A stretch of 64,000 nucleotides of DNA from IMGVR_UViG_3300032296_003307:1-64000; one strand, 5' to 3'; counted from the first letter of the stretch, positions 2,418 through 34,976 are shown. Notes: generated from the letters alone by a model not told the origin. Numbers and translations: made by a program.

Positions 2418-2858
2418 ATGTGGTTATACAACGAAAAAGTTATAGAAAATATTGAGGATTTTCCTCAAGATACCTTTGGTTTTATTTACATAGTAACACA
2501 TAAACCAAGTGGTATTTCTTACATTGGTAAAAAGGTATTATATTACAATGTAAAGAAAAAATTAACAAAAAAGGAACTAGCAGAACAAACAGGTCCAGGC
2601 AGGAAGTCAACCACAAAGGTGGTAGCAAAAGAATCGGACTGGAAAACCTATTATGGCTCTGCTAAACCAATTTTAGAACTCATTAAGGATGGTAAACAAG
2701 AGGAATTTACCCGTGAAATTTTACAATTGGTTCCTAATAAAAAACTTCTGACTTACTATGAATGTAAGTTTTTATTTAAATATGGTGTATTAGAACATCC
2801 TTTAGAATATTTTAACGATAATATTTTAGGTAAGTTCTTCACTAAAGACTTTAATTAA
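2418..2858 (+). CDS. GIY-YIG family (Seg-like) endonuclease
   Basis: GFIYIVTHKPSGISYIGKK (GIY..YIG), later YYGS, conserved E (YYEC) and N (YFNDNI). Confidence 0.8.
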   Translation: MWLYNEKVIENIEDFPQDTFGFIYIVTHKPSGISYIGKKVLYYNVKKKLTKKELAEQTGPGRKSTTKVVAKESDWKTYYGSAKPILELIKDGKQEEFTREILQLVPNKKLLTYYECKFLFKYGVLEHPLEYFNDNILGKFFTKDFN

Positions 2859-5391: not shown

Positions 5392-6065
5392 AGTTATTAA
5401 ATCTTTTATTAAAAATTTATAAAGAAGAATATGATTTGAATCTTAAAGAGGGTTTAATCAAAACTACTAATATTGGTAAAACTATAAACTTACTCAGAGC
5501 ATCTTTTGATTTTGGGTTTGAATATCAAAGAGATGATAATACATTTGAAGTAACCTTTCATCAAATTAATAAAAATATTTTAGATAATTTTTTAAAATAT
5601 GTTAATAATTTAGGTTGGTTTCCTTCTTATATTTCTACTCCAGCATATAAAGGAAAATGGAGAGAAAATACATATGATGATTATTTGTCTAAAATTAGGT
5701 TTGAAGCAAAATTTGATGAAGAAATAGTTGAAAAAATACCCCAAATTCTTTATCATATCACTCCAACTCAAAATGTTAATAAAATTTTAAAAATAGGATT
5801 AGTACCTAAATCAAGATCAAAAGTATCTTATCATCCTGAAAGAATTTATTTAGGAAAATCTATCGGTGGTATAGAAAAATTAGCTCCTCAAATGAATTTA
5901 AGAACTGGAGATAAAAATTTTACAATATTAAAAATCAACACTGATCTAATTCCTGGAGAATATTTAAGATTATATACTGATCCTAATTATAATAAAGAAG
6001 CATTTTACACTTTAAATAACATTCCTCCACAAGCAATAGAAAAAATTAAAGACATACAATTATGA
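5388..6065 (+). CDS. ADP-ribosyltransferase-fold protein (Tpt1/KptA-like)
   Basis: LYHITPTQNVNKILKIGLVPK, RIYL, ILKIN and C-terminal NIPPQAI pattern. Confidence 0.65.
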   Translation: MKLLNLLLKIYKEEYDLNLKEGLIKTTNIGKTINLLRASFDFGFEYQRDDNTFEVTFHQINKNILDNFLKYVNNLGWFPSYISTPAYKGKWRENTYDDYLSKIRFEAKFDEEIVEKIPQILYHITPTQNVNKILKIGLVPKSRSKVSYHPERIYLGKSIGGIEKLAPQMNLRTGDKNFTILKINTDLIPGEYLRLYTDPNYNKEAFYTLNNIPPQAIEKIKDIQL

Positions 6066-6424
6066 AAAAATTAATAGATTTACTTAACGAAATCGAAGAA
6101 AAAGACAACAAAAAAGTTGTTAAAGAAGAACCATCTGTAGTAGATGAGGTAGGAAAATTCTTTGTAGTTAAAAAACCTAAAAAAGGTATGACCAAAGAAG
6201 ATATGGTATATGAAGCTACTGTATTCGATGAAGTAAAAATGGAAGAGGTAAAAGGTGTTTACAAAAACAAATCAGAAGCCAATCGCCACGCCACTGCATC
6301 TTTAATGGAATATGAAAAACAACTTCAGGAAATGGAAGCCGCTGTAGAAGAGTTCCGTGCCATGAAGAAAGATATTGAAGCAAAAAGAAAAGAAGCAGCC
6401 GAAAAAGTTAAAAGTCTTAAATGA
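6062..6424 (+). CDS. Hypothetical protein with leader peptide and C-terminal coiled coil
   Basis: MKKLIDLLNE leader; ATGA overlaps with both neighbours. Confidence 0.7.
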   Translation: MKKLIDLLNEIEEKDNKKVVKEEPSVVDEVGKFFVVKKPKKGMTKEDMVYEATVFDEVKMEEVKGVYKNKSEANRHATASLMEYEKQLQEMEAAVEEFRAMKKDIEAKRKEAAEKVKSLK

Positions 6425-9400
6425 TAGATTCTATCCTAGAGATATTATTTGAGGAAGACTACACAAAAACAGTAGCCATTTATGGTGGTGGTTTTAAACC
6501 ACCTACCAAAGGTCATTTTAATGTTGTTGAAAAAACATTACAAGAATTACCTGATATAGATGAAGCAATTGTTTTTGTTGGTGGAGGAGTTAGAGATGGT
6601 ATTACCCAAGAAGAATCCTTAACCATTTGGAATATCTACAAAAAATATCTTTCAGATAAAGTTACTATAGAACCATCTGTAGCTCCTGTTAAATCAATTT
6701 TAAATTACGCTAAAGAACATCCTGAAGAAAAAGTTTATTGGATTTTAGGTGCTCGTGAAGGTAATGAAGAAGATTTGACAGATATTGCCAACAGAACTAA
6801 ATCAATTGAAAAATATCCTAACATTGAGGTTAAAGTGATTACCTCCTCAGGTGGTGTTAGTGGTACTAAAACAAGAAAAACCTTATTAGACAATAATAAA
6901 GAACAATTTTTCCATCTCATTCCAGATATAGAGGAAAAAGAGGAAATATGGAACATACTTTCTCCAAAGGTTCAAGAATCATTAGAGGAAGGTTTTATAG
7001 AAAATGCACAAGAAAATATGAAAAAGTTGCTTTTAGCCATTAAACAAGAAGGCAGAGAAACAAGAGATGCCTTTAAGTTAGTTTTAAAAGCAGCCAAAGG
7101 TGAAATCCAACTGACAGACGAACAAAAGAAACAAATTGGAGATCAACTAAAAGATGTTTTGAAAATGGTTGGTTTAGTTAGTATTGCTGTTCTTCCTGGT
7201 AGTTTTATTGTTGGAGCTTTAATTAAAATTTTTAAAGCAGAACGTTTAGTATTTCCTTCATCATTGATGAATGAAGACAAACCCTCAGGTGATTCTAATC
7301 CTTTAGGATTAAAATATATTGATATTTGGCATGAGGGTCAATACAAAGCTGAAGAAAATAAAACAGAAGAAGCTATAAAATTAATGATTCAAGCTGCTAA
7401 AGAAGCTGAAGAATTAGAAAGTATTGGAGAAGCAAATTATTATAAAGGAACTATAGCTTGGTTAAAAAAAGATTATAATACTGTTAACAAATACATTAAT
7501 GATAAATTTGTTAAATCAACAGGTAATGATGAAGTATTAAAACGACTTTTAAATAATAAAGATAAATCTTATAAAGAGGCATATAATACTTCTATAAATG
7601 AAGTTGGAGAAGCAAGTGCTAAAGTTTATCCTTTTTCTTCTGATAAAGATCCTAGTGAAATAATAAATTTAGCTAAAAACTTTTTTAGTAAAGGAACCTC
7701 ATCTAAAGTTTATCAACGAGTTTTAACATATACTTTTTCTACAGATAAAGCCGATTACGTTGTTAAATTTAACATAGAGGTAGAACGTCAAACATATGTA
7801 AACTTCTCTAAAAACCCTGATTGGAAACCAGGTCCTCCATATAAAACATATGCTTCTGTTGGTTTCAATATTGAGGGAGAGGAAGAAGATAAAGATACTA
7901 ATTTAAATGAACAGTTTTCTGTTTTATCTACAGTAACAAAAATTATTTTTGATTTTATTGACAAAATAAATGAAGCTGAAGGTAATTTAGTGTCATTAGT
8001 AATTGCTCCTAAAAGTGATACTGGTGAAGAATCATCATTGAATTCTAAACGAGGTAGATTCTACACAGCATACATTCAAAAGAATTTATCCAAATACCCA
8101 GAATATAAAACCAGAGATGGTAAAAATAATTCAGGGGGTGAATATGTAGAAATTTATAAAACAAACAGTGTAAATGAATTAGAAGAAGGTAGAAAAAAGA
8201 AACCTGATCCTAAAAAAGGAACAGGCAAAAAACCTGAAGGATCAGGTCGTAGATTATACACAGATGAAGATCCTAAAGATACTGTTAGTATTAAATTTAA
8301 AACCAAAGAAGATATAGTTGATACTTTAAATAAAAAACAATTTAAAGCTAAATCACATGCTCGTCAATCTCAAATTATTAATTTAATTCATCAACGAGTA
8401 AGAGCCGCTTATGGTAAAGCAAAAGATCCTGAGGTAAAAGCAAGATTAAAACGTGCTTTAGATTATATTGAGTCTCGTAAAGAGGCATCAAAAGAAAAAA
8501 CAGAACGTTTACGTAAAATGAAAGAAGCATCCGACCCACAAGCAGGAACAGCTTTACCTTATGGTTCAGGATTTGCTCCTGTAAAAGAAAGTTACCAATT
8601 TAAAGTTTCCGATAAAAACTATGATGAAGAAGATAATTCTTTAATTTCAGTTGATTATAAATTTTCTACCCCAGATAATGATTATAGAGTTGAATTTTAT
8701 TCAGGTGAATACAATCCTGAAGCTAAAATATTTGATGTTTCTTTTGGAATAGACAAATATGGTTCTAAAATTGATACTTTCCAAATGACAGGTGAAGGTA
8801 ATGCTTTAAGTATTCTTAAAACTATTGTTGATATTATTAAAGATTTTACAAAACGTTTTGAAGTAAATAAGTTAGTTATTGATCCAACAAGCGAAAAACG
8901 TGGAAAAATTTATTCAATGATATTAAAATCATTACCCCCAGACATCTTAAATAAAGTAGAACTTATAAATGAAAATGATTTATTTGGTTTAAATAAATTG
9001 GATAAAGATTTTGTAAAAGAATCCAAAGAATTAAACGTTCAAGATTTAGCTTATAAACAAATACCAGGACTATTAGAAAAAGGAATTAATTATGGATTAG
9101 CCCATTTTAGAGGATTCATGAAATCTTCTTACAAATGGAGTGGTCCAAAGGATAGAAATGATTTTTTTGATTTTATAGAAAATATAAAAGGAGAAATAAA
9201 ACGAGTTCCTTTATCATCTATAAAACCTTCTCAATCAGGTAATGATTACAAAAATTCCTCTTCAGAATATGAAGCAGAAGAATTTCAAAAAATATTAGAT
9301 GGAGAAAAAAATATAGAGGATCATAGGAAAGAAGATTTTTATCCTATATTAGTTAATAAAAGAGATAATAAAATATTAGATGGAAATCATAGACATTATG

Positions 9401-10434
9401 CTTTATCAGCAATAAATTCACCCTATGCTGTAGTATTATATGTAGATGTTCCTAAACAATATATAAATGAAAAATCAGATCCTTTTGGTTTAAATAAATT
9501 TGCAAAAGACTTTGTAAAAGAAGTTTTTGAAGAAACTTGGAATCCCAAAGACTCGTTCGTATCTTTATCCGTATTTATGAAAGACAATGGAATGAACATA
9601 ACCCCATTGCCTAAAATTAAGGTTATATCAGACGACAAAGAAAATGCGTCGCATCTTTTGGGTAAGACTGCTTACTACAATCCAGCAGATAAGTCAATTA
9701 CTCTTTATACCTTTGGAAGGCACCCAAAAGATGTTTTACGCTCTTTTGCTCATGAAATGGTTCACCACGAACAAAATCTTAATGGTACTTTAGGAAATGT
9801 TAGTACTACTAACACAAATGAAGATGGTCATTTAGATAAACTTGAGAGAGAAGCATATGAAAAAGGTAATATCATGTTTAGAAATTGGGAAGATAGTATT
9901 AAGAGTTCAGTAAATGAAATATATTTTTTAGATATTCCTAAATTCAATTATCCTAAAACATTTGTGGATAAATTACGTAAATCCTTAAATGAAATTACTT
10001 TATCAAAAGATAATGCTGTGGAAATAAATGGAGATTTAACTAATGGAAAATTTCAAGTAGGAGATATAATATATGTGTATTCTATAAAAAATATACCAAA
10101 TCCATATAAAGATGAAGGGGAATTTTATAATGTTTCTTTTTATCCTGAAGATAATATAATTTCTGAACCTTTAGAAGGAAAAGAAAATTATGTTAAAATT
10201 TTATCAACAATGTTCAAAATAATATCTGATTTTTCCGAAAAAGAAAAACCAAAATATATAGGAATATCATCTATGGATAACGACAACAATAAAAATTACC
10301 ATAGAGTATATGCCAATTTAACAGATAATAAATTTAACAGAATACCAGGATACTTTAGAAAAGATGTTAGTCTAGGATTTGATACTCCTCAAGGAAAAGG
10401 TAGATTTGTAGTATTAAAAAGAAAAGATGTATAA
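6421..10434 (+). CDS. 1337-aa modular polyprotein: HxGH-type nucleotidyltransferase, several unknown modules, ParB/Srx-like domain, HExxH metallopeptidase
   Basis: GGFKPPTKGHF (6421-6990), ILDGNHR (ParB module 9022-9471), AHEMVHHEQ...EREAY (9535-9918). Modules are separated by LEE/LMNE/SINE/SVNE/MKE/VKE/LINE/YINE/SLNE. Confidence 0.8.
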   Translation: MIDSILEILFEEDYTKTVAIYGGGFKPPTKGHFNVVEKTLQELPDIDEAIVFVGGGVRDGITQEESLTIWNIYKKYLSDKVTIEPSVAPVKSILNYAKEHPEEKVYWILGAREGNEEDLTDIANRTKSIEKYPNIEVKVITSSGGVSGTKTRKTLLDNNKEQFFHLIPDIEEKEEIWNILSPKVQESLEEGFIENAQENMKKLLLAIKQEGRETRDAFKLVLKAAKGEIQLTDEQKKQIGDQLKDVLKMVGLVSIAVLPGSFIVGALIKIFKAERLVFPSSLMNEDKPSGDSNPLGLKYIDIWHEGQYKAEENKTEEAIKLMIQAAKEAEELESIGEANYYKGTIAWLKKDYNTVNKYINDKFVKSTGNDEVLKRLLNNKDKSYKEAYNTSINEVGEASAKVYPFSSDKDPSEIINLAKNFFSKGTSSKVYQRVLTYTFSTDKADYVVKFNIEVERQTYVNFSKNPDWKPGPPYKTYASVGFNIEGEEEDKDTNLNEQFSVLSTVTKIIFDFIDKINEAEGNLVSLVIAPKSDTGEESSLNSKRGRFYTAYIQKNLSKYPEYKTRDGKNNSGGEYVEIYKTNSVNELEEGRKKKPDPKKGTGKKPEGSGRRLYTDEDPKDTVSIKFKTKEDIVDTLNKKQFKAKSHARQSQIINLIHQRVRAAYGKAKDPEVKARLKRALDYIESRKEASKEKTERLRKMKEASDPQAGTALPYGSGFAPVKESYQFKVSDKNYDEEDNSLISVDYKFSTPDNDYRVEFYSGEYNPEAKIFDVSFGIDKYGSKIDTFQMTGEGNALSILKTIVDIIKDFTKRFEVNKLVIDPTSEKRGKIYSMILKSLPPDILNKVELINENDLFGLNKLDKDFVKESKELNVQDLAYKQIPGLLEKGINYGLAHFRGFMKSSYKWSGPKDRNDFFDFIENIKGEIKRVPLSSIKPSQSGNDYKNSSSEYEAEEFQKILDGEKNIEDHRKEDFYPILVNKRDNKILDGNHRHYALSAINSPYAVVLYVDVPKQYINEKSDPFGLNKFAKDFVKEVFEETWNPKDSFVSLSVFMKDNGMNITPLPKIKVISDDKENASHLLGKTAYYNPADKSITLYTFGRHPKDVLRSFAHEMVHHEQNLNGTLGNVSTTNTNEDGHLDKLEREAYEKGNIMFRNWEDSIKSSVNEIYFLDIPKFNYPKTFVDKLRKSLNEITLSKDNAVEINGDLTNGKFQVGDIIYVYSIKNIPNPYKDEGEFYNVSFYPEDNIISEPLEGKENYVKILSTMFKIISDFSEKEKPKYIGISSMDNDNNKNYHRVYANLTDNKFNRIPGYFRKDVSLGFDTPQGKGRFVVLKRKDV

Positions 10435-10975
10435 ACTTAAATTAACAGACATATACAAACAAATTAAAGAAGAGGAAACACAACCTCAATCAGCTCAACA
10501 ATATACAATTTATTGTGATATGGATGGAGTTATTGCTGACTTTGATAAACGATTTAAAGATTTAAATCCTGAACATTTATCTGCTGCCCAATACCAAACA
10601 AAATATGGTATAGAAAAGTTTTGGGATTTTATAGATGAAGAAAATAAAGTAAAATTCTGGGTTGGTATTCCTTGGATGCCTGATGGAAAAGAACTTTGGG
10701 ATTATATTAAAAAATACAAACCAACCTTGTTATCAGCCCCTTCTAAAAAACCACAATCTCGTTTAGGAAAAAGATTATGGGTTAAAAACAATATTCCAGG
10801 AACTCCTTTGATTTTAGCAGCAGCTGATAAAAAACAGAATTATTCTGGAGGAAATAAAATACTTATCGACGACAGAAAAGATAATGTTGACCAATGGCGC
10901 TCACAAGGTGGTATTGGGATAGCACATACCTCTGCTCAAGATACAATTAAACAATTACAAAATTTAGGATTATAA
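10427..10975 (+). CDS. HAD-family 5'(3')-deoxyribonucleotidase-like phosphatase
   Basis: IYCDMDGVIADF (DxD), LLSAP, K..W, ILIDDR motifs. Confidence 0.88.
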   Translation: MYKLKLTDIYKQIKEEETQPQSAQQYTIYCDMDGVIADFDKRFKDLNPEHLSAAQYQTKYGIEKFWDFIDEENKVKFWVGIPWMPDGKELWDYIKKYKPTLLSAPSKKPQSRLGKRLWVKNNIPGTPLILAAADKKQNYSGGNKILIDDRKDNVDQWRSQGGIGIAHTSAQDTIKQLQNLGL

Positions 10976-10980
10976 TTATT

Positions 10981-11607
10981 ATGTATAGATTAAGAGAAAA
11001 TGAAGAAGATGCTCAATCAAGACTTGCCCTTGATTTTGACATTATTTTAACACCAAAAACCAGTGTTGAAGATGCTGTAAAAGCTTTAGAAAACATTGAT
11101 AACTATGGTGCTTATGTTTCTAATATGAGAAATAAAGCATCAATTGAAAAAGCAATAGAAATGCATTTTGGAAACATGGATGATGAAGGTAAAAAAATAT
11201 CACCTGCCAAAAAAGCATCTATTGAAAAACAAAGAGGTGAAAAATTTCCTGTTAAAACAAAACAAGCAATTGATGATTTAGTTAAATCATTAACCAGCAA
11301 ACCAAATCTTTTAAACTATACAGTTAAAGGTAATACTCTTGTTTTCCCTAAAGGAAAAAATCCTTCAAAAGATGTAACCAAAAAAATAATCAAAACTGTA
11401 ATGGACAATGCTGATATTACTTTTTCAGTAAAAGAAAAAGAATCAGTAAGTGAAGATGCAATTACAGATAAAATTAAATCATCTTTTATGTACCAAGTTA
11501 CTGGTGGTAAAAAAGGTGAGCCAATGTCTGCTGGTAAAAAATTACCTGCTAACACTAAAATTAAAAAATCTGAACTAAAAGAAATTATTAAAAATTTCAA
11601 CAAATAA
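10981..11607 (+). CDS. Hypothetical Lys-rich protein
   Basis: 208-aa ORF abutting neighbours in the same operon. Confidence 0.65.
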   Translation: MYRLRENEEDAQSRLALDFDIILTPKTSVEDAVKALENIDNYGAYVSNMRNKASIEKAIEMHFGNMDDEGKKISPAKKASIEKQRGEKFPVKTKQAIDDLVKSLTSKPNLLNYTVKGNTLVFPKGKNPSKDVTKKIIKTVMDNADITFSVKEKESVSEDAITDKIKSSFMYQVTGGKKGEPMSAGKKLPANTKIKKSELKEIIKNFNK

Positions 11608-12179
11608 TGAAAAACCAATCAGTTTTAAAAAAAGAGTTTAAACAGAGAGATGTTCAACGTCTCCGTAACCTTGTTCAAGGCAAGTACGGAGAAAAATCTA
11701 CTGTTGGAACTGGTTATCAAAAAGCAAAAGAATTTCATTCCGAAGGTGATGTTTGGGAAGAGGATGGAAGAACTTGGACTATTAAAAATGGTTTAAAACA
11801 AAACATTACTAAATTAGATAAAGCAAAAGAAGGCATTGTATTGCCTTTGTTTTGTCCTACTTGTTCTCGTACAATGAAACCACATTTGGACAAAAAATGG
11901 TTTGTAATGTATGGACACTGTTTTGATTGTCAAGTGGATTTTGAAGCAAAACTTAAAAAAGAAGGAAAATTAGAGGAATTTGAAAAACAAGTAATAAATG
12001 ACCATTTGGAAGGTACTATCAATGATTTTGAAGCATGGTTTGATGAATTAATTAATTCAAAAGACCAATTCATTACAGAGACAGGCGATATTGAAAAATG
12101 GGATGGTTCCGGTAAAGAGCAGTTGTTAAAATATAAACAAGAAGCATTAGAATATTTAAACAAACAACGAAAAGAATAA
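11607..12179 (+). CDS. Hypothetical protein with CxxC...CxxC zinc-binding motif
   Basis: LFCPTC...HCFDC. Confidence 0.7.
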   Translation: MKNQSVLKKEFKQRDVQRLRNLVQGKYGEKSTVGTGYQKAKEFHSEGDVWEEDGRTWTIKNGLKQNITKLDKAKEGIVLPLFCPTCSRTMKPHLDKKWFVMYGHCFDCQVDFEAKLKKEGKLEEFEKQVINDHLEGTINDFEAWFDELINSKDQFITETGDIEKWDGSGKEQLLKYKQEALEYLNKQRKE

Positions 12180-12796
12180 TGGAAATTACAATGATTACAA
12201 CCATTCTTGTTGCTTTAATTACAGCCGTAATTGGTCCCGCTGTTTTAGAATGGGTTAAAGCAAAATTGAGAAAAAATGAAGACAAAGACTCTTCAGTAAA
12301 AGAAGCAATTGATGTCAATGAATTAGTTGACCATCAATTAGATCAATTGTTAGAGGAATTAGGTTGTGATCGAATTTGGGTTGGACAATTTCATAATGGT
12401 GGTCATTTTTATCCTACAGGAAAATCAATCCAGAAATTTTCTATTTTCTACGAAAAATTAACCCCAAGTACCTCAGCAATCCAACATATATTTCAACAAA
12501 TACCTGTTTCATTATTTCCAAAAGCTTTATCTAAGCTTTACAAAGATGGAGAATTGGCTGTTGTAAATTACAATACTGATGAAACTTATGATTTAAGTAT
12601 GTTTTCTAAAGACTATGGAACCAAATCTTTTTATATGTTAGCCATAGATGATTTGGACGAACATTTCATAGGAGTAATGGGAATTGCATTCAATGATAAA
12701 GAACATAAATTATCCAAAGAAGAATGGATATTTATACGACAGAAAGTAGGGGCGATTGGTTCCCTTTTAACAGACTATTTATACAAGAAAAAATGA
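12179..12796 (+). CDS. Putative holin (T4 gpT-like: N-terminal TM + GAF-like domain)
   Basis: Hydrophobic ITMITTILVALITAVIGPAVL, then a GAF-like region (CDRIWVGQFHNGG...FIGVMGIAF). Confidence 0.6.
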   Translation: MEITMITTILVALITAVIGPAVLEWVKAKLRKNEDKDSSVKEAIDVNELVDHQLDQLLEELGCDRIWVGQFHNGGHFYPTGKSIQKFSIFYEKLTPSTSAIQHIFQQIPVSLFPKALSKLYKDGELAVVNYNTDETYDLSMFSKDYGTKSFYMLAIDDLDEHFIGVMGIAFNDKEHKLSKEEWIFIRQKVGAIGSLLTDYLYKKK

Positions 12797-13548
12797 AAGA
12801 CATAAACAAAATTAAAGAATTTTTCTCTAAACCTTTAGAAGAAGCAAAAAGAGATATTGACAAGATTAAAAAACAATTAGATGCTTTAGGTGTTAAATAT
12901 GAAATGTCAACCACTGATAAAGTTAGACCATTTAAAGTGATTTACAAACCAGTTAATAAATCAGATGAATTTTATGATAAATTTGAAGACATTGTTGATT
13001 TATTTAACTTAAAAAGTTTTGTAAAATCATCAATGAATGAAGCTAAAAAAGAAGATGCCGTTGATACAATTACAATGGATATTCCTTTATTCCTTCGTAT
13101 GTTAGAATATTCAAGAGAAGATGCCTCTCAAGACATGGATTTACATGATGTTACCGAAAAAGCAAATAAATTAGGTAAAGAAAGAGGTATTTTATCCATG
13201 GAAGACTATGAAGAAATTGTAGGTGCTGCCGAAGATATTAACGAACTTTCAGATTATTTTAAACGTAGAAAAGCCCAAGACGATTACGCTGTTAATAAAA
13301 AAGACAAACCAGCAAAACCTTATAATCCCAACTCTTCAGGCAAAACAGACTACATGAAGCGTAGAGAAAAAGAATTAAATGAAAGAATTTCCGAAGCATT
13401 AAATAAAATCAACGAAGAACTTTGCCCTGCTGGTAAAGCATACATTAAAAAAAGAAAAGCAGCTGGTGAAAAATCATCTGCTTACCTTTCAGGTCGTGCT
13501 GTAAAAGTATGTAAAGGCCAAATGTCAGGTAAAGCTAAGAAAAAATAA
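12793..13548 (+). CDS. Modular hypothetical protein (putative head-internal protein)
   Basis: ATG 12793 overlaps the upstream stop. Short modules separated by PLEE/SMNE/DINE/ELNE/KINEE. Confidence 0.7.
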   Translation: MKDINKIKEFFSKPLEEAKRDIDKIKKQLDALGVKYEMSTTDKVRPFKVIYKPVNKSDEFYDKFEDIVDLFNLKSFVKSSMNEAKKEDAVDTITMDIPLFLRMLEYSREDASQDMDLHDVTEKANKLGKERGILSMEDYEEIVGAAEDINELSDYFKRRKAQDDYAVNKKDKPAKPYNPNSSGKTDYMKRREKELNERISEALNKINEELCPAGKAYIKKRKAAGEKSSAYLSGRAVKVCKGQMSGKAKKK

Positions 13549-31269: not shown

Positions 31270-31872
31270 ATGAAACAAGTATTAATTGAAACCATACCAT
31301 TTACAGTCTCACGTGAACAATTACACGAGGGTCTTAAAGCATCTTCAGGCAATCCTTTGGTTGAAGGAATACTTGCTACAGCCGAGGTAAAAAATGGTAA
31401 TGGTCGTTATTATCCAAAAGAGTTATGGGAAAGAGAAATTGACAAGTATCAACAAATGATTGATAGTAATACTTCAACAGGTGAGCTAGATCACCCTGAT
31501 TCCTCAATTATCTCTTTAAAAAATGTTTCTCACATCATCAGAAAATGCTGGTGGGATGGTGATAAAGTAATGGGTAAAATAGAAATTTTACCTACAGTGT
31601 CAGGCAACATATTAAAAGCCCTTATTGATAATGGAGTTACAGTAGGTGTATCCTCTAGAGGAATGGGTTCTCTAAAACAAATTGGAGAAACATTAGAGGT
31701 ACAAGATGATTTTGAATTATTGTGTTGGGACTTTGTATCAACACCTTCAAATCCAGGTTCATATATGACATTGGTTAAAGAAGGTAAAGAAGTTCAAGCA
31801 TACAAATATGGTAAAGTAAATTCTTTACTAACTGAGATCCTTTGTGCAAACGGATCTTGCCCAATATTTTAA
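31270..31872 (+). CDS. gp21: Prohead core protease (T4 gp21-like)
   Basis: KNGNGRYYP, GELDHP, VSHII, GVSSRGMGS, WDFVSTPS. Confidence 0.95.
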   Translation: MKQVLIETIPFTVSREQLHEGLKASSGNPLVEGILATAEVKNGNGRYYPKELWEREIDKYQQMIDSNTSTGELDHPDSSIISLKNVSHIIRKCWWDGDKVMGKIEILPTVSGNILKALIDNGVTVGVSSRGMGSLKQIGETLEVQDDFELLCWDFVSTPSNPGSYMTLVKEGKEVQAYKYGKVNSLLTEILCANGSCPIF

Positions 31873-33212: not shown

Positions 33213-34976
33213 ATGTCACAAGTACAACAATTACTCGAAAGCGCAGCTGGCTCATGGAAGTCACTCCAGAGCGATGCTGCTAAATTGGCCGGTAAATGGT
33301 CAAGAACTGGATTGTTAGAAGGTTTAGATGAAGTTAACAAAAATAACATGTCTATCTTGTTAGAAAACCAAGCTAAACAGTTAGTAACTGAAACTAACAC
33401 TATCTCTTCTAACTCATTTTATCAATCAGGTGGTCAAGGTGAAAACTGGGCTGGTATTGCTTTGCCTTTAGTTCGTAAGGTATTCGGAACTATCGTAGCT
33501 AAAGAATTCGTTTCAGTTCAGCCTATGAACATGCCTTCAGGTCTCGTGTTCTTCTTAGATTTCCAATACGGAAATAACAAGACTCCTTACACTGCAGGTT
33601 CTTCAATCTATGGTAACAGAAACACTGCTTCTCAGTTCCCATTCTCTACTCCTGCTGCCGAAGGTGGTCTTTATGGTGGTCCTGAAGGTCGTTTCACCTA
33701 CTCTACTAACCAATTCTCTGCTTCATTCACAGCAACTGGTTCAGTAGGTGGTGGTACTTTACCTACAGTTACTGCTGGTAACGCTACTGTAGTTACAGCT
33801 TCTTGGGCTGAATTAAATTTTGATTCTGATTACTCATCTTCAGTTATTGCTAACCAAATCTACAAAATAACTATCACTGCTTCAAACGCTACTTTACCTA
33901 GCTTTGATCAAGATGCAGTTCGTGGTTTCGTAGGTTCAGGTAGCACAGCTGGTTTCGGTACTGCTTTTGCTCCTGCTAACTTATTACCTCAGTTCACTAC
34001 CTACAACTACAGCGCTAACAGCATTAGCTTGTTCTATACTGCTTCTGCTACCGCTACTTGTTCTGGTTCTTTCACAGTATTCTATGAAAAATCAACTTCA
34101 AGAGATGGTCTTAATGTAACCTCAGGTGACAACGTAACCTCAGGTAATTACTCAGGTCGTGGTGATTTCGAAGCTGATGGCGCTTTCTCAATCCCTAACG
34201 CTGCTTCTGCTACTCAAATCGTTATCCCTGAAATCAACGTTAGAATGCAGTCACAGCCTATCACAGCTAAAACCAAGAAATTGAAAGCTGTATGGACTCC
34301 TGAATTTGCTCAAGACTTAGCTGCTTACCAAAACATCGATGCTGAAGCTGAATTAACCAACATCATGAGCGAGTACATTTCTATGGAAATTGACCTCGAA
34401 ATTCTTGACATGTTGATTGAAGATGCTGCCGCTGGTACTGAATACTGGTCAGCTGTTAACAACCAGATCTACAACGGAACTACTTTAGTAACTAATGCTT
34501 CTGGTTTCTACAACACTCAAGGTCAGTGGTTCCAAACTTTAGGAACTAAGATCCAGAAGTTAAGCAACAAAATCCACCAGTTAACTCTTCGTGGAGGCGC
34601 TAACTTCTTAGTAACTTCTCCAACTATCGCTACTATTCTTGAATCTATCCCTGGATTCGCTTCTACTAACAACGGTGAAGCTGATCAAATGGAATATGCT
34701 TTCGGAGTACAGAAAGTTGGTTCAGTTAACGGTCGTTACAAGGTTTATAAAAACCCATACATGACTGAAAACTTGATCTTGTTAGGTTACAGAGGTAGCC
34801 AGTTCCTTGAAACAGGTGCTGTGTTTGCTCCTTACATTCCTTTGATCATGACTCCTCTAGTGTACGATCCTGATACCTTCACTCCACGTAAAGGTCTCTT
34901 GACTCGCTACGCTAAGAAGATGTTACGTCCTGAATTCTACGCTAAGATCTATGTTAGTGGATTAAACACTATCTAA
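33213..34976 (+). CDS. gp23: Major capsid protein (T4 gp23-like)
   Basis: LLENQ, SVQPMNMPSGLVFFL, KLKAVWTPEFAQDL, FAPYIPL, FTPRKGLLTRY. ATG 33213 follows an A-rich leader. Confidence 0.97.
   Translation: MSQVQQLLESAAGSWKSLQSDAAKLAGKWSRTGLLEGLDEVNKNNMSILLENQAKQLVTETNTISSNSFYQSGGQGENWAGIALPLVRKVFGTIVAKEFVSVQPMNMPSGLVFFLDFQYGNNKTPYTAGSSIYGNRNTASQFPFSTPAAEGGLYGGPEGRFTYSTNQFSASFTATGSVGGGTLPTVTAGNATVVTASWAELNFDSDYSSSVIANQIYKITITASNATLPSFDQDAVRGFVGSGSTAGFGTAFAPANLLPQFTTYNYSANSISLFYTASATATCSGSFTVFYEKSTSRDGLNVTSGDNVTSGNYSGRGDFEADGAFSIPNAASATQIVIPEINVRMQSQPITAKTKKLKAVWTPEFAQDLAAYQNIDAEAELTNIMSEYISMEIDLEILDMLIEDAAAGTEYWSAVNNQIYNGTTLVTNASGFYNTQGQWFQTLGTKIQKLSNKIHQLTLRGGANFLVTSPTIATILESIPGFASTNNGEADQMEYAFGVQKVGSVNGRYKVYKNPYMTENLILLGYRGSQFLETGAVFAPYIPLIMTPLVYDPDTFTPRKGLLTRYAKKMLRPEFYAKIYVSGLNTI

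What the first reader, a model, noticed from the sequence alone, without database searches (positions are those of the whole stretch)
8983..9522. 39-bp direct repeat flanks the ParB-like module inside the polyprotein
Seen: TTTGGTTTAAATAAATTGGATAAAGATTTTGTAAAAGAA (8983-9021) and TTTGGTTTAAATAAATTTGCAAAAGACTTTGTAAAAGAA (9484-9522) match at 35/39 and encode FGLNKxxKDFVKE on both sides of the ParB module. Inference: the module entered, and can leave, by recombination at a linker-coding sequence, which offers a mechanism for cassette-like shuffling of cargo domains.
Basis: partly seen in the sequence, partly recalled or inferred. Interest (0 to 1): 0.65.

Follow-up and report, generated by a model that had tools for sequence, protein, structure and literature searches.

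The report
Repeated linker flanks swapped ParB cassette
The 39-base repeat is real: it is two copies of a standard spacer peptide on either side of a ParB-type enzyme module that related phages have recently swapped between their giant multi-enzyme proteins, so it marks domain shuffling but is not itself the site every swap uses.

Summary
Observation confirmed: 8983-9021 and 9484-9522 match 35/39, lie 501 nt apart in frame, and sit inside one 1337-aa ORF (6421-10434) of a T4-like Flavobacterium-type phage record. The module between them folds as a ParB/sulfiredoxin domain. All 15 closest relatives carry this linker once, just before the HExxH peptidase module. One (L010) joins DUF6934 directly to linker and peptidase with no ParB. 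Others hold a different module in that slot. The ParB cassette (9012-9480) is 98.1% identical to one in a genome that is otherwise about 70% identical (L033). There it sits in another context with no repeat. So cassette exchange is real and recent, but the 39-nt repeat is not the general entry or exit site. The junctions are the codons for VKE and NE-KSD. All nine module borders end in [LIVMF]-[NK]-E. This fits the T4 gp21 cleavage motif, and the genome has gp21 homologues. I read the repeat as two copies of a portable, probably cleavable linker, brought next to each other by out-of-register recombination. A second cassette flanked by a 39/40 linker repeat occurs in L015. This is a new variant of polyvalent proteins.

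The parts
6421..10434 (+). Single ORF for a 1337-aa multi-module (polyvalent) protein, P0001
   Evidence: Syntenic multi-domain gene between the exonuclease and 5'-nucleotidase genes in Flavobacterium phage immuto.
6421..6456 (+). N-terminal peptide MIDSILEILFEE (aa 1-12), ending L-F-E/F-E-E; a possible capsid-targeting or propeptide-like leader
   Evidence: Most family members start with M..LTK.L...LL[DE]E before the Rossmann strand; some lack it. Role inferred.
6457..6990 (+). HIGH-type nucleotidyltransferase module (NMNAT/cytidylyltransferase-like), aa 13-190
   Evidence: Weak Pfam CTP_transf_like match, GGGFKPPTKGH motif. The immuto homologue is annotated NMN adenylyltransferase.
7603..8178 (+). 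DUF6934-like domain copy 1 (aa 395-586), ends VNE586
   Evidence: hhalign against copy 2: probability 96.4%, E=1.4e-9.
8179..8589 (+). Basic helical module (aa 587-723) with internal junction MKE702|ASDPQAG and terminal PVKE723
   Evidence: 72% paralogue at G000 131581-131916. ParB is inserted at E702|A703 in L029 and P0003.
8590..8973 (+). DUF6934 domain copy 2 (aa 724-851), ends INE851
   Evidence: Pfam PF22028, E=2e-9. Absent in L007 and L009, present in L003 and L010.
8983..9021 (+). Linker repeat copy 1, FGLNKLDKDFVKE (aa 855-867)
9022..9471 (+). ParB/Srx-fold cassette (aa 868-1017): N-terminal helical bundle plus ParB core with DGNHRH at aa 987-992; ends YINE1017
   Evidence: AF2 pLDDT 91.4, Foldseek ParB/Srx hits, homologue alignment A1.
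9012..9480 (+). Tract 98.1% identical (460/469) to L033 5411-5879, in a genome otherwise ~70% identical: a recently exchanged cassette with ends at T-GTA-AAA-GAA and AAA-TCA-GAT
9484..9522 (+). Linker repeat copy 2, FGLNKFAKDFVKE (aa 1022-1034), in the canonical position before the peptidase; 38/39 identical to the L009 linker
9523..9918 (+). HExxH (H1111-E-M-V-H1115) zincin-like metallopeptidase core (aa 1035-1166), ends VNE1166
   Evidence: Invariant HEM[VI]HH in 8 relatives. Weak Pfam M91 match. AF2 pLDDT 69 with weak Foldseek hits to PprI/IrrE, selecase and Wss1.
9919..10434 (+). DUF6934-like domain copy 3 (aa 1167-1337); present in L009, absent in most relatives, whose ORF ends after the peptidase
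31270..31872 (+). T4 gp21-type prohead protease homologue (Peptidase_S77), the candidate enzyme for cleavage at the [LIV]-x-E linkers
   Evidence: (103 bits, above cut-off).
33213..34976 (+). T4 gp23-type major capsid protein, 53% identical to the Flavobacterium phage immuto MCP

Best explanation
The repeat is two copies of the short linker peptide ((K)SDP-FGLNxxAKDFVKE) that this family of phage polyvalent proteins uses between modules. In the window's lineage the linker normally occurs once, just before the zinc-peptidase module.

Shown: the window is an L009-like backbone that carries an extra block between PVKE723 and the peptidase linker. The block is a DUF6934 domain with its own downstream linker (as in L010), followed by a ParB/Srx cassette recently shared with an otherwise distant phage (L033).

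Inferred: the two linker copies came to flank ParB through out-of-register, microhomology-level recombination between polyprotein alleles with different module content. The joins fall at the codons that end every module, [LIV]-[NK]-E (here GTA AAA GAA = VKE), and at NE|KSD. The repeat is therefore a by-product and marker of cassette shuffling, not its required site.

Inferred, less certain: the module-ending [LIV]-x-E motifs and the FGLN linker are cleavage and spacer signals for the phage's T4 gp21-type prohead protease (alternatively for the embedded zincin). Under this reading the polyprotein is cut into separate enzymes that are packaged and injected. The same codons then serve both as processing sites and as in-frame recombination joints. 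The 39-nt repeat could still mediate a precise in-frame 501-nt deletion, giving an L010-like architecture, but this was not observed.
For: - The linker occurs once, always before the peptidase, in 15 related loci. Copy 2 plus the downstream sequence matches L009 at 38/39 nt and then identically.
- Nucleotide mosaic: L009 matches at 94-97.6% over 6062-7276, 7594-8590 and 9464-12844; L010 matches at 91% over 8175-8994, running into copy 1; L033 matches at 98.1% over 9012-9480 against a ~70% background.
- The slot varies between genomes: empty in L010, an unrelated module in L003/4/5/12/13, ParB in the window.
- ParB sits in other slots without the repeat: L033, L029, P0003 and the small proteins L018-L021.
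- The linker is generic. It lies before ParB in P0004, after ParB in P0005, P0008-12 and L032, and on both sides of a ParB variant in P0013.
- Independent replicate: L015 has a 39/40-nt in-frame repeat encoding KE|ASDPQAGTALP on both sides of a ~110-aa nucleotidyltransferase-like cassette.
- All nine homology-defined module borders of P0001 (E285, 394, 586, 702, 723, 851, 867, 1017, 1166) fall on the 13 [LIVMF][NK]E motifs. A rough chance estimate is ~1e-12. [LIVMF]NE is 3.8-fold enriched over the proteome.
- gp21-type protease genes are present. The second copy of the major capsid gene has FLINE|AAS where T4 gp23 is cleaved, by my recollection of the T4 site.
- T4 gp21 cleaves after L/I-X-E, and capsid-targeting peptides carry diverse cargo (PMC9026906, PMC5694885).
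- At least 12 small ORFs in the record share an N-terminal ~20-aa peptide ending [LIV]-x-E.
- In the AF2 model the linker residues have pLDDT below 50 and form a helix not docked on the peptidase core.
Against: - No cleavage, packaging or recombination was observed directly.
- The gene lies among replication and nucleotide-metabolism genes, not head genes.
- Both copies share AAA (Lys) at codon 5 where every relative has GAA or GCT. This fits an in-situ duplication or gene conversion as well as a two-allele origin.
- Parsimony on the four differences does not separate these origins.
- P1' residues after the putative sites are heterogeneous.
- HSP ends tend to run into shared motifs, so the border statistic is not fully independent.
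- The upstream flank of the L032-type allele (ParB-linker-peptidase) is unknown because the contig is cut.
- The record may be a chimera of two phages, so which protease belongs with this gene is uncertain.
Confidence: 0.6

Rival explanations
1. In-situ duplication. When the ParB cassette was inserted next to the resident linker, staggered microhomology joins (left join at the linker's 3' VKE, right join at the KSD before the linker) or replication slippage duplicated the linker, like a long target-site duplication. Copy 1 then diverged.
For: Both copies share the derived AAA (Lys) codon seen in no relative. The cassette ends coincide with the 3' end of copy 1 and the sequence just 5' of copy 2. 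The repeat in L015 is nearly perfect at 39/40, as expected for a fresh duplication.
Against: Copy 1 differs from copy 2 at 4/39 (10%), while the cassette differs from L033 by only 1.9% and copy 2 from L009 by 1/39. Copy 1 has Leu and GAT states seen in other alleles (L003, L007, L015). L010 shows that a DUF6934 domain can bring its own linker. The insert has no transposase, integrase or terminal inverted repeats.
Confidence: 0.2
2. The 39-nt linker sequence is itself the homologous recombination site through which the ParB module enters and leaves, so the module cycles between occupied and empty states.
For: Direct in-frame repeats with 17-nt and 12-nt exact runs flank the module. An empty-site architecture with one linker exists in L010. 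The linker lies next to ParB in P0004, P0005, P0013 and L032.
Against: The 98.1% tract shared with L033 excludes the repeat, and L033 has no linker on either side. The cassette occupies at least four other contexts without it. L010 is only 91% (DUF6934 side) and 68% aa (peptidase side) related, so it is not a recent excision product. No exact hybrid junction was found in IMG/VR.
Confidence: 0.12
3. Artefact or convergence. Either the arrangement is an assembly chimera of co-occurring strains, or the two peptides are similar only because selection favours the same linker peptide, without shared DNA ancestry.
For: The record shows signs of being chimeric at a larger scale: two divergent head-gene sets and a composition shift near 115-120 kb. 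The copy1-to-ParB junction is found in no other record.
Against: Exact shared runs (17 nt or less in the repeat, ~10 nt at the left junction) are shorter than usual assembly k-mers. The ParB-linker-peptidase join is independently seen in L032 at 93.9%, and DUF6934-linker is seen in L010. Ten of the 11 codons that encode the same residue in both copies are themselves identical, and they match the codons of all lineage relatives, which argues for homology. The ORF is intact and in frame.
Confidence: 0.05

Closest known systems
Polyvalent proteins of phages and conjugative elements (Iyer, Burroughs, Anand, de Souza, Aravind 2017; PMC5512222)
   Same: One polypeptide strings together unrelated enzymatic effector domains, including a zincin-like HExxH metallopeptidase, a ParB/Srx (DdrB-like) domain and a nucleotidyltransferase. 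That paper predicts processing into separate products and delivery with the DNA. For one system it raises, as a possibility only, recombination of cassettes into the main locus.
   Different: This is a T4-like phage of the Flavobacterium-phage group. The modules are separated by a recognisable grammar ([LIV]-[NK]-E ends and an FGLN linker), DUF6934-like domains recur three times, and cassette exchange is documented at nucleotide level (98% versus 70%). Pfam ddrB-ParB is not reached at threshold.
T4 internal head proteins and Alt: capsid-targeting sequence plus gp21 processing (PMC9026906, PMC5694885, PMC3012670)
   Same: The record has gp21-family protease genes. Short conserved peptides ending hydrophobic-x-Glu are attached to highly diverse cargo. 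T4 gp21 cleaves after L/I-X-E. The cargo are anti-host effectors injected with the DNA.
   Different: In T4 the signal is a single N-terminal 10-residue peptide on separate small proteins. Here the putative sites are internal and repeated within one 1337-aa chain. Neither packaging nor cleavage is shown, and there is no sequence homology to the T4 CTS.
Phage P1 DdrB (ParB domain fused to a C-terminal metallopeptidase, processed and found in the head), as described in PMC5512222
   Same: A ParB/Srx domain lies next to a zincin-like peptidase in one phage protein, with processing proposed.
   Different: The order and context differ. Here ParB is a swappable insert between a DUF6934 domain and the peptidase, and most close relatives lack it.
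Polymorphic toxin loci (CdiA VENN, Rhs PxxxxDPxGL pre-toxin motifs) with cassette replacement by recombination (own knowledge; mentioned in PMC5512222)
   Same: A short conserved peptide-coding motif demarcates variable cargo and supplies in-frame joints for swapping. The linker's DPFGL resembles DPxGL.
   Different: There are no Rhs/YD or CdiA repeats (no Pfam hits). Several cargo modules sit in series rather than one C-terminal tip. The resemblance of DPFGL to DPxGL is recalled from memory and untested.
Deletions and duplications between short direct repeats in T4-type phages (classical genetics; own knowledge)
   Same: Short in-frame direct repeats flank a dispensable segment in a highly recombinogenic phage type.
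   Different: No deletion product was observed here, and the repeat is imperfect (17-nt longest exact run).

Membership tests
ParB/sulfiredoxin superfamily (module between the repeats) | Alpha+beta ParB/Srx core fold | tested here: met
   AF2 pLDDT 91.4. All significant and near-significant Foldseek PDB hits are ParB-N, Noc, sulfiredoxin, SerK or SbnI; they cover ~90-100 residues of the C-terminal two thirds.
ParB/sulfiredoxin superfamily (module between the repeats) | Conserved active-site Arg in a DGxHR-type motif | tested here: met
   D987-G-N-H-R991-H is invariant in six homologues and in all ParB-bearing family members.
Pfam ddrB-ParB (PF18763) | Score above the curated gathering threshold (27.6 bits) | tested here: not met
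   12.9-13.7 bits for the window protein; best E=1e-3 among homologues. A PDB sequence-profile search found no ParB.
Polyvalent proteins (Iyer et al. 2017) | Two or more unrelated effector or catalytic domains in one polypeptide of a phage or mobile element | tested here: met
   NTase, 3x DUF6934-like, ParB/Srx and HExxH peptidase in one ORF of a virus record.
Polyvalent proteins (Iyer et al. 2017) | Zincin-like metallopeptidase domain | tested here: inconclusive
   HEMVHH is invariant. Pfam M91 is sub-threshold. The model has pLDDT 69, and the Foldseek hits are only weak ones to minimal zincins, E>=0.06.
Polyvalent proteins (Iyer et al. 2017) | Packaged in the virion and delivered into the host | not testable with these tools
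   Needs virion proteomics.
T4-type prohead-protease-processed head cargo (CTS/gp21 system) | gp21-family (Peptidase_S77) protease encoded by the phage | tested here: met
   Two matches above cut-off, at 31291-31773 and 233494-233940.
T4-type prohead-protease-processed head cargo (CTS/gp21 system) | Hydrophobic-x-Glu motif at the processed positions | tested here: met
   9 of 9 module borders end [LIVMF][NK]E. This shows motif presence only, not cleavage.
T4-type prohead-protease-processed head cargo (CTS/gp21 system) | Demonstrated cleavage and presence inside capsids | not testable with these tools
   No proteomic or expression data.
Transposon or insertion element with target-site duplication | Transposase or integrase and terminal inverted repeats in the insert | tested here: not met
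   The insert is 150 in-frame codons of a ParB fold only. No inverted repeats lie at the cassette ends.
Rhs/polymorphic toxin pre-toxin motif (DPxGL) | Rhs/YD-repeat shell upstream of the motif | tested here: not met
   No RHS or YD Pfam matches in P0001 or its pieces.

The most novel reading that the evidence does not exclude
These T4-like aquatic phages build their injected effector arsenal from a cassette grammar. Every module ends in a prohead-protease site ([LIV]-[NK]-E), and short portable linker peptides (FGLN..VKE, KE|ASDPQAGTALP) separate modules. The same few codons would then serve two roles: processing sites that release each enzyme in the capsid, and in-frame recombination joints that let co-infecting phages swap, insert or delete effector domains. 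Linker duplications such as this 39-nt repeat would be the footprints of those swaps.
Probability: 0.3. Interest if true: 0.75.

Novelty: new variant of a known kind. Interest (0 to 1): 0.55.

Why it matters
Polyvalent proteins are thought to be the payload that phages deliver to disarm their hosts, but how their domain sets diversify has so far been inferred only from architectures. This locus gives nucleotide-level evidence that a single enzymatic domain moved between phages that are only ~70% identical. It landed in frame at short conserved module-end codons. The same anatomy, a cassette flanked by a duplicated linker, recurs at another junction in a related phage.

If the module-end motifs are prohead-protease sites, the system links three things that are usually studied apart: capsid targeting and processing, effector diversification, and recombination. 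It would also give a natural template for packaging arbitrary enzymes in T4-like capsids. The cleavage claim can be tested directly by virion mass spectrometry or by co-expression with the protease.

Tried and rejected
I did not try another route.
- Exact DNA patterns for the copy1-to-ParB junction and for the predicted single-linker deletion product found 0 matches in IMG/VR. The window's own record is excluded there, so this is weak evidence.
- Source of ParB within the same genome: tblastn of all modules against the 268.7-kb record found no ParB paralogue, only a paralogue of the basic module.
- Pfam, PHROGs and a PDB sequence search did not identify ParB at significance. The identification rests on the fold.
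- The peptidase fold search gave only weak zincin hits.
- Transposon/target-site-duplication, intein-like insert and Rhs DPxGL readings were considered and rejected. The insert has no mobility enzyme, no terminal inverted repeats and no Rhs repeats, and it folds as ParB.
- I tried to decide between an in-situ duplication and a two-allele origin by comparing the 39 nt with all relatives. Both need four changes, so the question is undecidable.
- The literature gave nothing on the LTESDL N-terminal peptide or on linker-based shuffling in polyvalent proteins.
- The metagenome scan found one contig (L032) with ParB-linker-peptidase, but it is cut inside ParB, so its left flank is unknown.


Full report
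**1. The observation**

The window is the first 64 kb of a 268,739-bp IMG/VR virus record. The two 39-nt copies are at 8983-9021 and 9484-9522 and match at 35/39. They are 501 nt apart, in frame, inside one ORF, 6421-10434 (1337 aa, P0001). They encode FGLNKLDKDFVKE (aa 855-867) and FGLNKFAKDFVKE (aa 1022-1034).

No dinucleotide shuffle reproduced a match. A binomial estimate gives about 4e-6 such pairs per window. No other copy exists in the whole record. With a one-codon indel the similarity extends upstream to ATAAATGAAAA..GAT.

**2. What the ORF is**

Pfam, PHROGs and profile comparisons give this module order:
- an N-terminal HIGH-type nucleotidyltransferase
- a hydrophobic/helical stretch
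- DUF6934-like domain 1
- a basic helical module
- DUF6934 domain 2 (PF22028, E=2e-9)
- linker copy 1
- the module under study
- linker copy 2
- an HExxH module (H1111-H1115)
- DUF6934-like domain 3

The module between the repeats has only sub-threshold ddrB-ParB matches. Folded with five homologues, however, it gives a confident model (pLDDT 91.4). All its best PDB matches are ParB/Srx proteins, and its DGNHRH motif is invariant. 'ParB-like' is therefore correct at fold level.

The neighbouring genes are a GIY-YIG endonuclease, primase, PD-(D/E)XK exonuclease, a zeta-toxin-like kinase and a 5'-nucleotidase. Flavobacterium phage immuto has a syntenic 907-aa multi-domain gene, annotated as NMN adenylyltransferase, between its exonuclease and 5'-nucleotidase genes. 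That gene lacks the linker.

The record is T4-like. It has gp21-type protease and gp23-type capsid genes, and the capsid protein inside the window is 53% identical to immuto's.

**3. Relatives**

Fifteen viral contigs encode relatives of P0001. All of them carry the linker once, immediately before the peptidase module.

Module content differs sharply between relatives:
- L007 and L009 join PVKE723 directly to KNDP-linker-peptidase, with no DUF6934-2 and no ParB.
- L010 joins DUF6934-2 to linker-peptidase, which is the 'empty site' with one linker.
- L003/4/5/12/13 have an unrelated ~160-aa module between DUF6934-2 and the linker.

None of these fifteen has ParB. At nucleotide level the window is an L009-like backbone, 94-97.6% identical over 6062-7276, 7594-8590 and 9464-12844. 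It carries an extra block at 8591-9463. The left part of that block is L010-like (91%, with the match running to 8994, inside copy 1).

**4. The ParB cassette elsewhere**

Searches with the module alone found it at 63-87% nt identity in small proteins (L018-L022, L030, L031). It also occurs inside the basic module at E702|A703 (L029, P0003), in P0004-P0014, and in P0002/L033.

L033 is syntenic with the window but only ~70% identical. Window 9012-9480 is the exception, at 98.1% identity (460/469; 3 amino-acid changes). The tract starts at T-GTA-AAA-GAA, which is shared by the window's ..DFVKE and L033's ..FAPVKE. It ends at AAA-TCA-GAT (KSD). L033 has no FGLN linker on either side.

This is direct evidence for recent transfer of just this cassette. 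L032 independently shows ParB-KSDP-linker-peptidase at 93.9% identity, but that contig is cut inside ParB.

**5. The linker is a generic element**

In more distant family members, DPFGL[NS]xYAxEL...E occurs in several positions:
- before ParB (P0004)
- after ParB and before other modules (P0005, P0008-P0012)
- on both sides of a ParB variant (P0013)

In the AF2 model of linker plus peptidase, the first 18 residues have pLDDT below 50. They form a helix that is not docked on the core.

A second case of the same anatomy exists at a different junction. In L015 a 39/40-nt in-frame repeat, 381 nt apart and encoding KE|ASDPQAGTALP, flanks a ~110-aa nucleotidyltransferase-like cassette.

**6. A border grammar**

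Homology breakpoints on P0001 fall at E285, E394, E586, E702, E723, E851, E867, E1017 and E1166. All nine are among the only 13 [LIVMF][NK]E motifs in the protein. A rough chance estimate is ~1e-12. HSPs tend to run into shared motifs, so this statistic is not fully independent. [LIVMF]NE is 3.8-fold enriched relative to the proteome.

T4 gp21 cleaves after L/I-X-E, and T4 loads diverse cargo into capsids through a short cleavable targeting peptide (PMC9026906; PMC5694885; PMC3012670). Three further observations in this record fit that picture:
- One capsid-protein copy reads FLINE|AAS where T4 gp23 is cut. The T4 site is from my memory.
- Many family members begin with M..LTK.L...LL[DE]E.
- At least 12 small ORFs elsewhere in the record share an N-terminal ~20-aa peptide, MKK.V.LTESDL.RIVKRV.KE. 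They have no known families.

I therefore infer, without direct evidence, that the module ends and the linker are processing signals for the gp21-type protease. The embedded zincin is the alternative suggested for polyvalent proteins in general (PMC5512222).

**7. Origin of the repeat**

- Shown: copy 2 belongs to the backbone, since it matches L009 at 38/39. Copy 1 lies directly downstream of DUF6934-2, as the single linker does in L010. The cassette fills the space between them exactly.
- Most economical reading: one unequal crossover at the ~10-nt GTAAAAGAA microhomology, between a DUF6934-linker-peptidase allele (L010 type) and an x-VKE|ParB-linker-peptidase allele. L032 and L033 show the two halves of that second type.
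- Alternative: an in-situ duplication during insertion. Both copies share a Lys codon that no relative has, which fits duplication or later gene conversion. Copy 1 also carries Leu and GAT states seen in other alleles. Either origin needs four changes, so I cannot decide between them.
- Assembly chimerism is unlikely, because the shared exact runs are 17 nt or shorter.

**8. Comparison with what is known**

The protein fits the 'polyvalent protein' concept (PMC5512222). That paper predicts processing by zincins. It mentions recombinational cassette variability only as a possibility, and it notes no genuine polyvalent proteins among the T4-like ART examples.

What is new here:
- the explicit module-end motif
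- the portable linker
- nucleotide-level proof of single-domain exchange
- duplicated linkers as footprints of that exchange

This is a new variant of a known kind, of moderate interest.

Noticed in passing
G000 25-37 kb (in window) versus 228-249 kb (outside window): The record carries two divergent, collinear sets of T4-type head genes: two Peptidase_S77 proteases, two gp23-like capsid proteins and three more pairs, at 27-47% aa identity. Tetranucleotide and GC composition shifts near 115-120 kb, and there are no terminal repeats. Flavobacterium phage immuto has one capsid gene. The 268.7-kb 'complete' record may be a join of two different phages, or a real phage with a duplicated head module.
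   Followed up: partly
G000 about 128-163 kb, 183 kb and 239 kb (locus L035 = 141000-147000); weaker cases in window at 13548, 19379 and 24045: At least 12 small ORFs (90-260 aa) with unrelated bodies share a conserved N-terminal ~20-aa peptide, MKK[IV]V[RK]LTESDL.R[IV]VKRV.KE, always ending hydrophobic-x-Glu. This resembles the logic of T4 capsid-targeting sequences. There were no Pfam or PHROG families and no literature hit.
   Followed up: partly
L015:7320-7360 and 7701-7741 (related viral contig): A second cassette flanked by a duplicated linker: a 39/40-nt in-frame direct repeat, 381 nt apart, encoding KE|ASDPQAGTALP on both sides of a ~110-aa Pol-beta-type nucleotidyltransferase-like module.
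   Followed up: yes
window 7277-7588 (aa 286-389) and L009:5094-5690: Two more module differences separate the window from its ~95-97% identical relatives L008 and L009. The window has a ~105-aa segment that they lack, after LMNE285. L009 has a ~200-aa insert (zinc-ribbon-like CxxC..CxxC plus an unknown domain) after SINE, between DUF6934-1 and the basic module.
   Followed up: partly
G000 131287-132021 (outside window): A small separate protein carries a 72% identical copy of the polyprotein's basic module (aa 587-703), together with a CxxC zinc-ribbon-like piece and an N-terminal peptide ending IVE. So modules also circulate as free-standing small genes.
   Followed up: partly
window 7150-7250 (aa ~247-275 of P0001): A hydrophobic stretch, VLKMVGLVSIAVLPGSFIVGALIKIF, looks like a transmembrane or membrane-inserting helix inside the polyprotein. 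It is conserved in L009, L029 and P0003.
   Followed up: no
window 7603-8178, 8590-8973, 9919-10434: The polyprotein contains three DUF6934-like domains. Copies 1 and 2 are related at hhalign probability 96%; copy 3 is weaker. Each closes a block of cargo modules. Some distant relatives score as GNAT acetyltransferase (PF13508) in the precomputed domain list.
   Followed up: partly
window 2418-2858: A SegE-like GIY-YIG homing-endonuclease gene (Pfam E=3e-26) sits just upstream of the primase gene, about 3.5 kb from the polyprotein. It is a possible local source of double-strand breaks that stimulate recombination.
   Followed up: no
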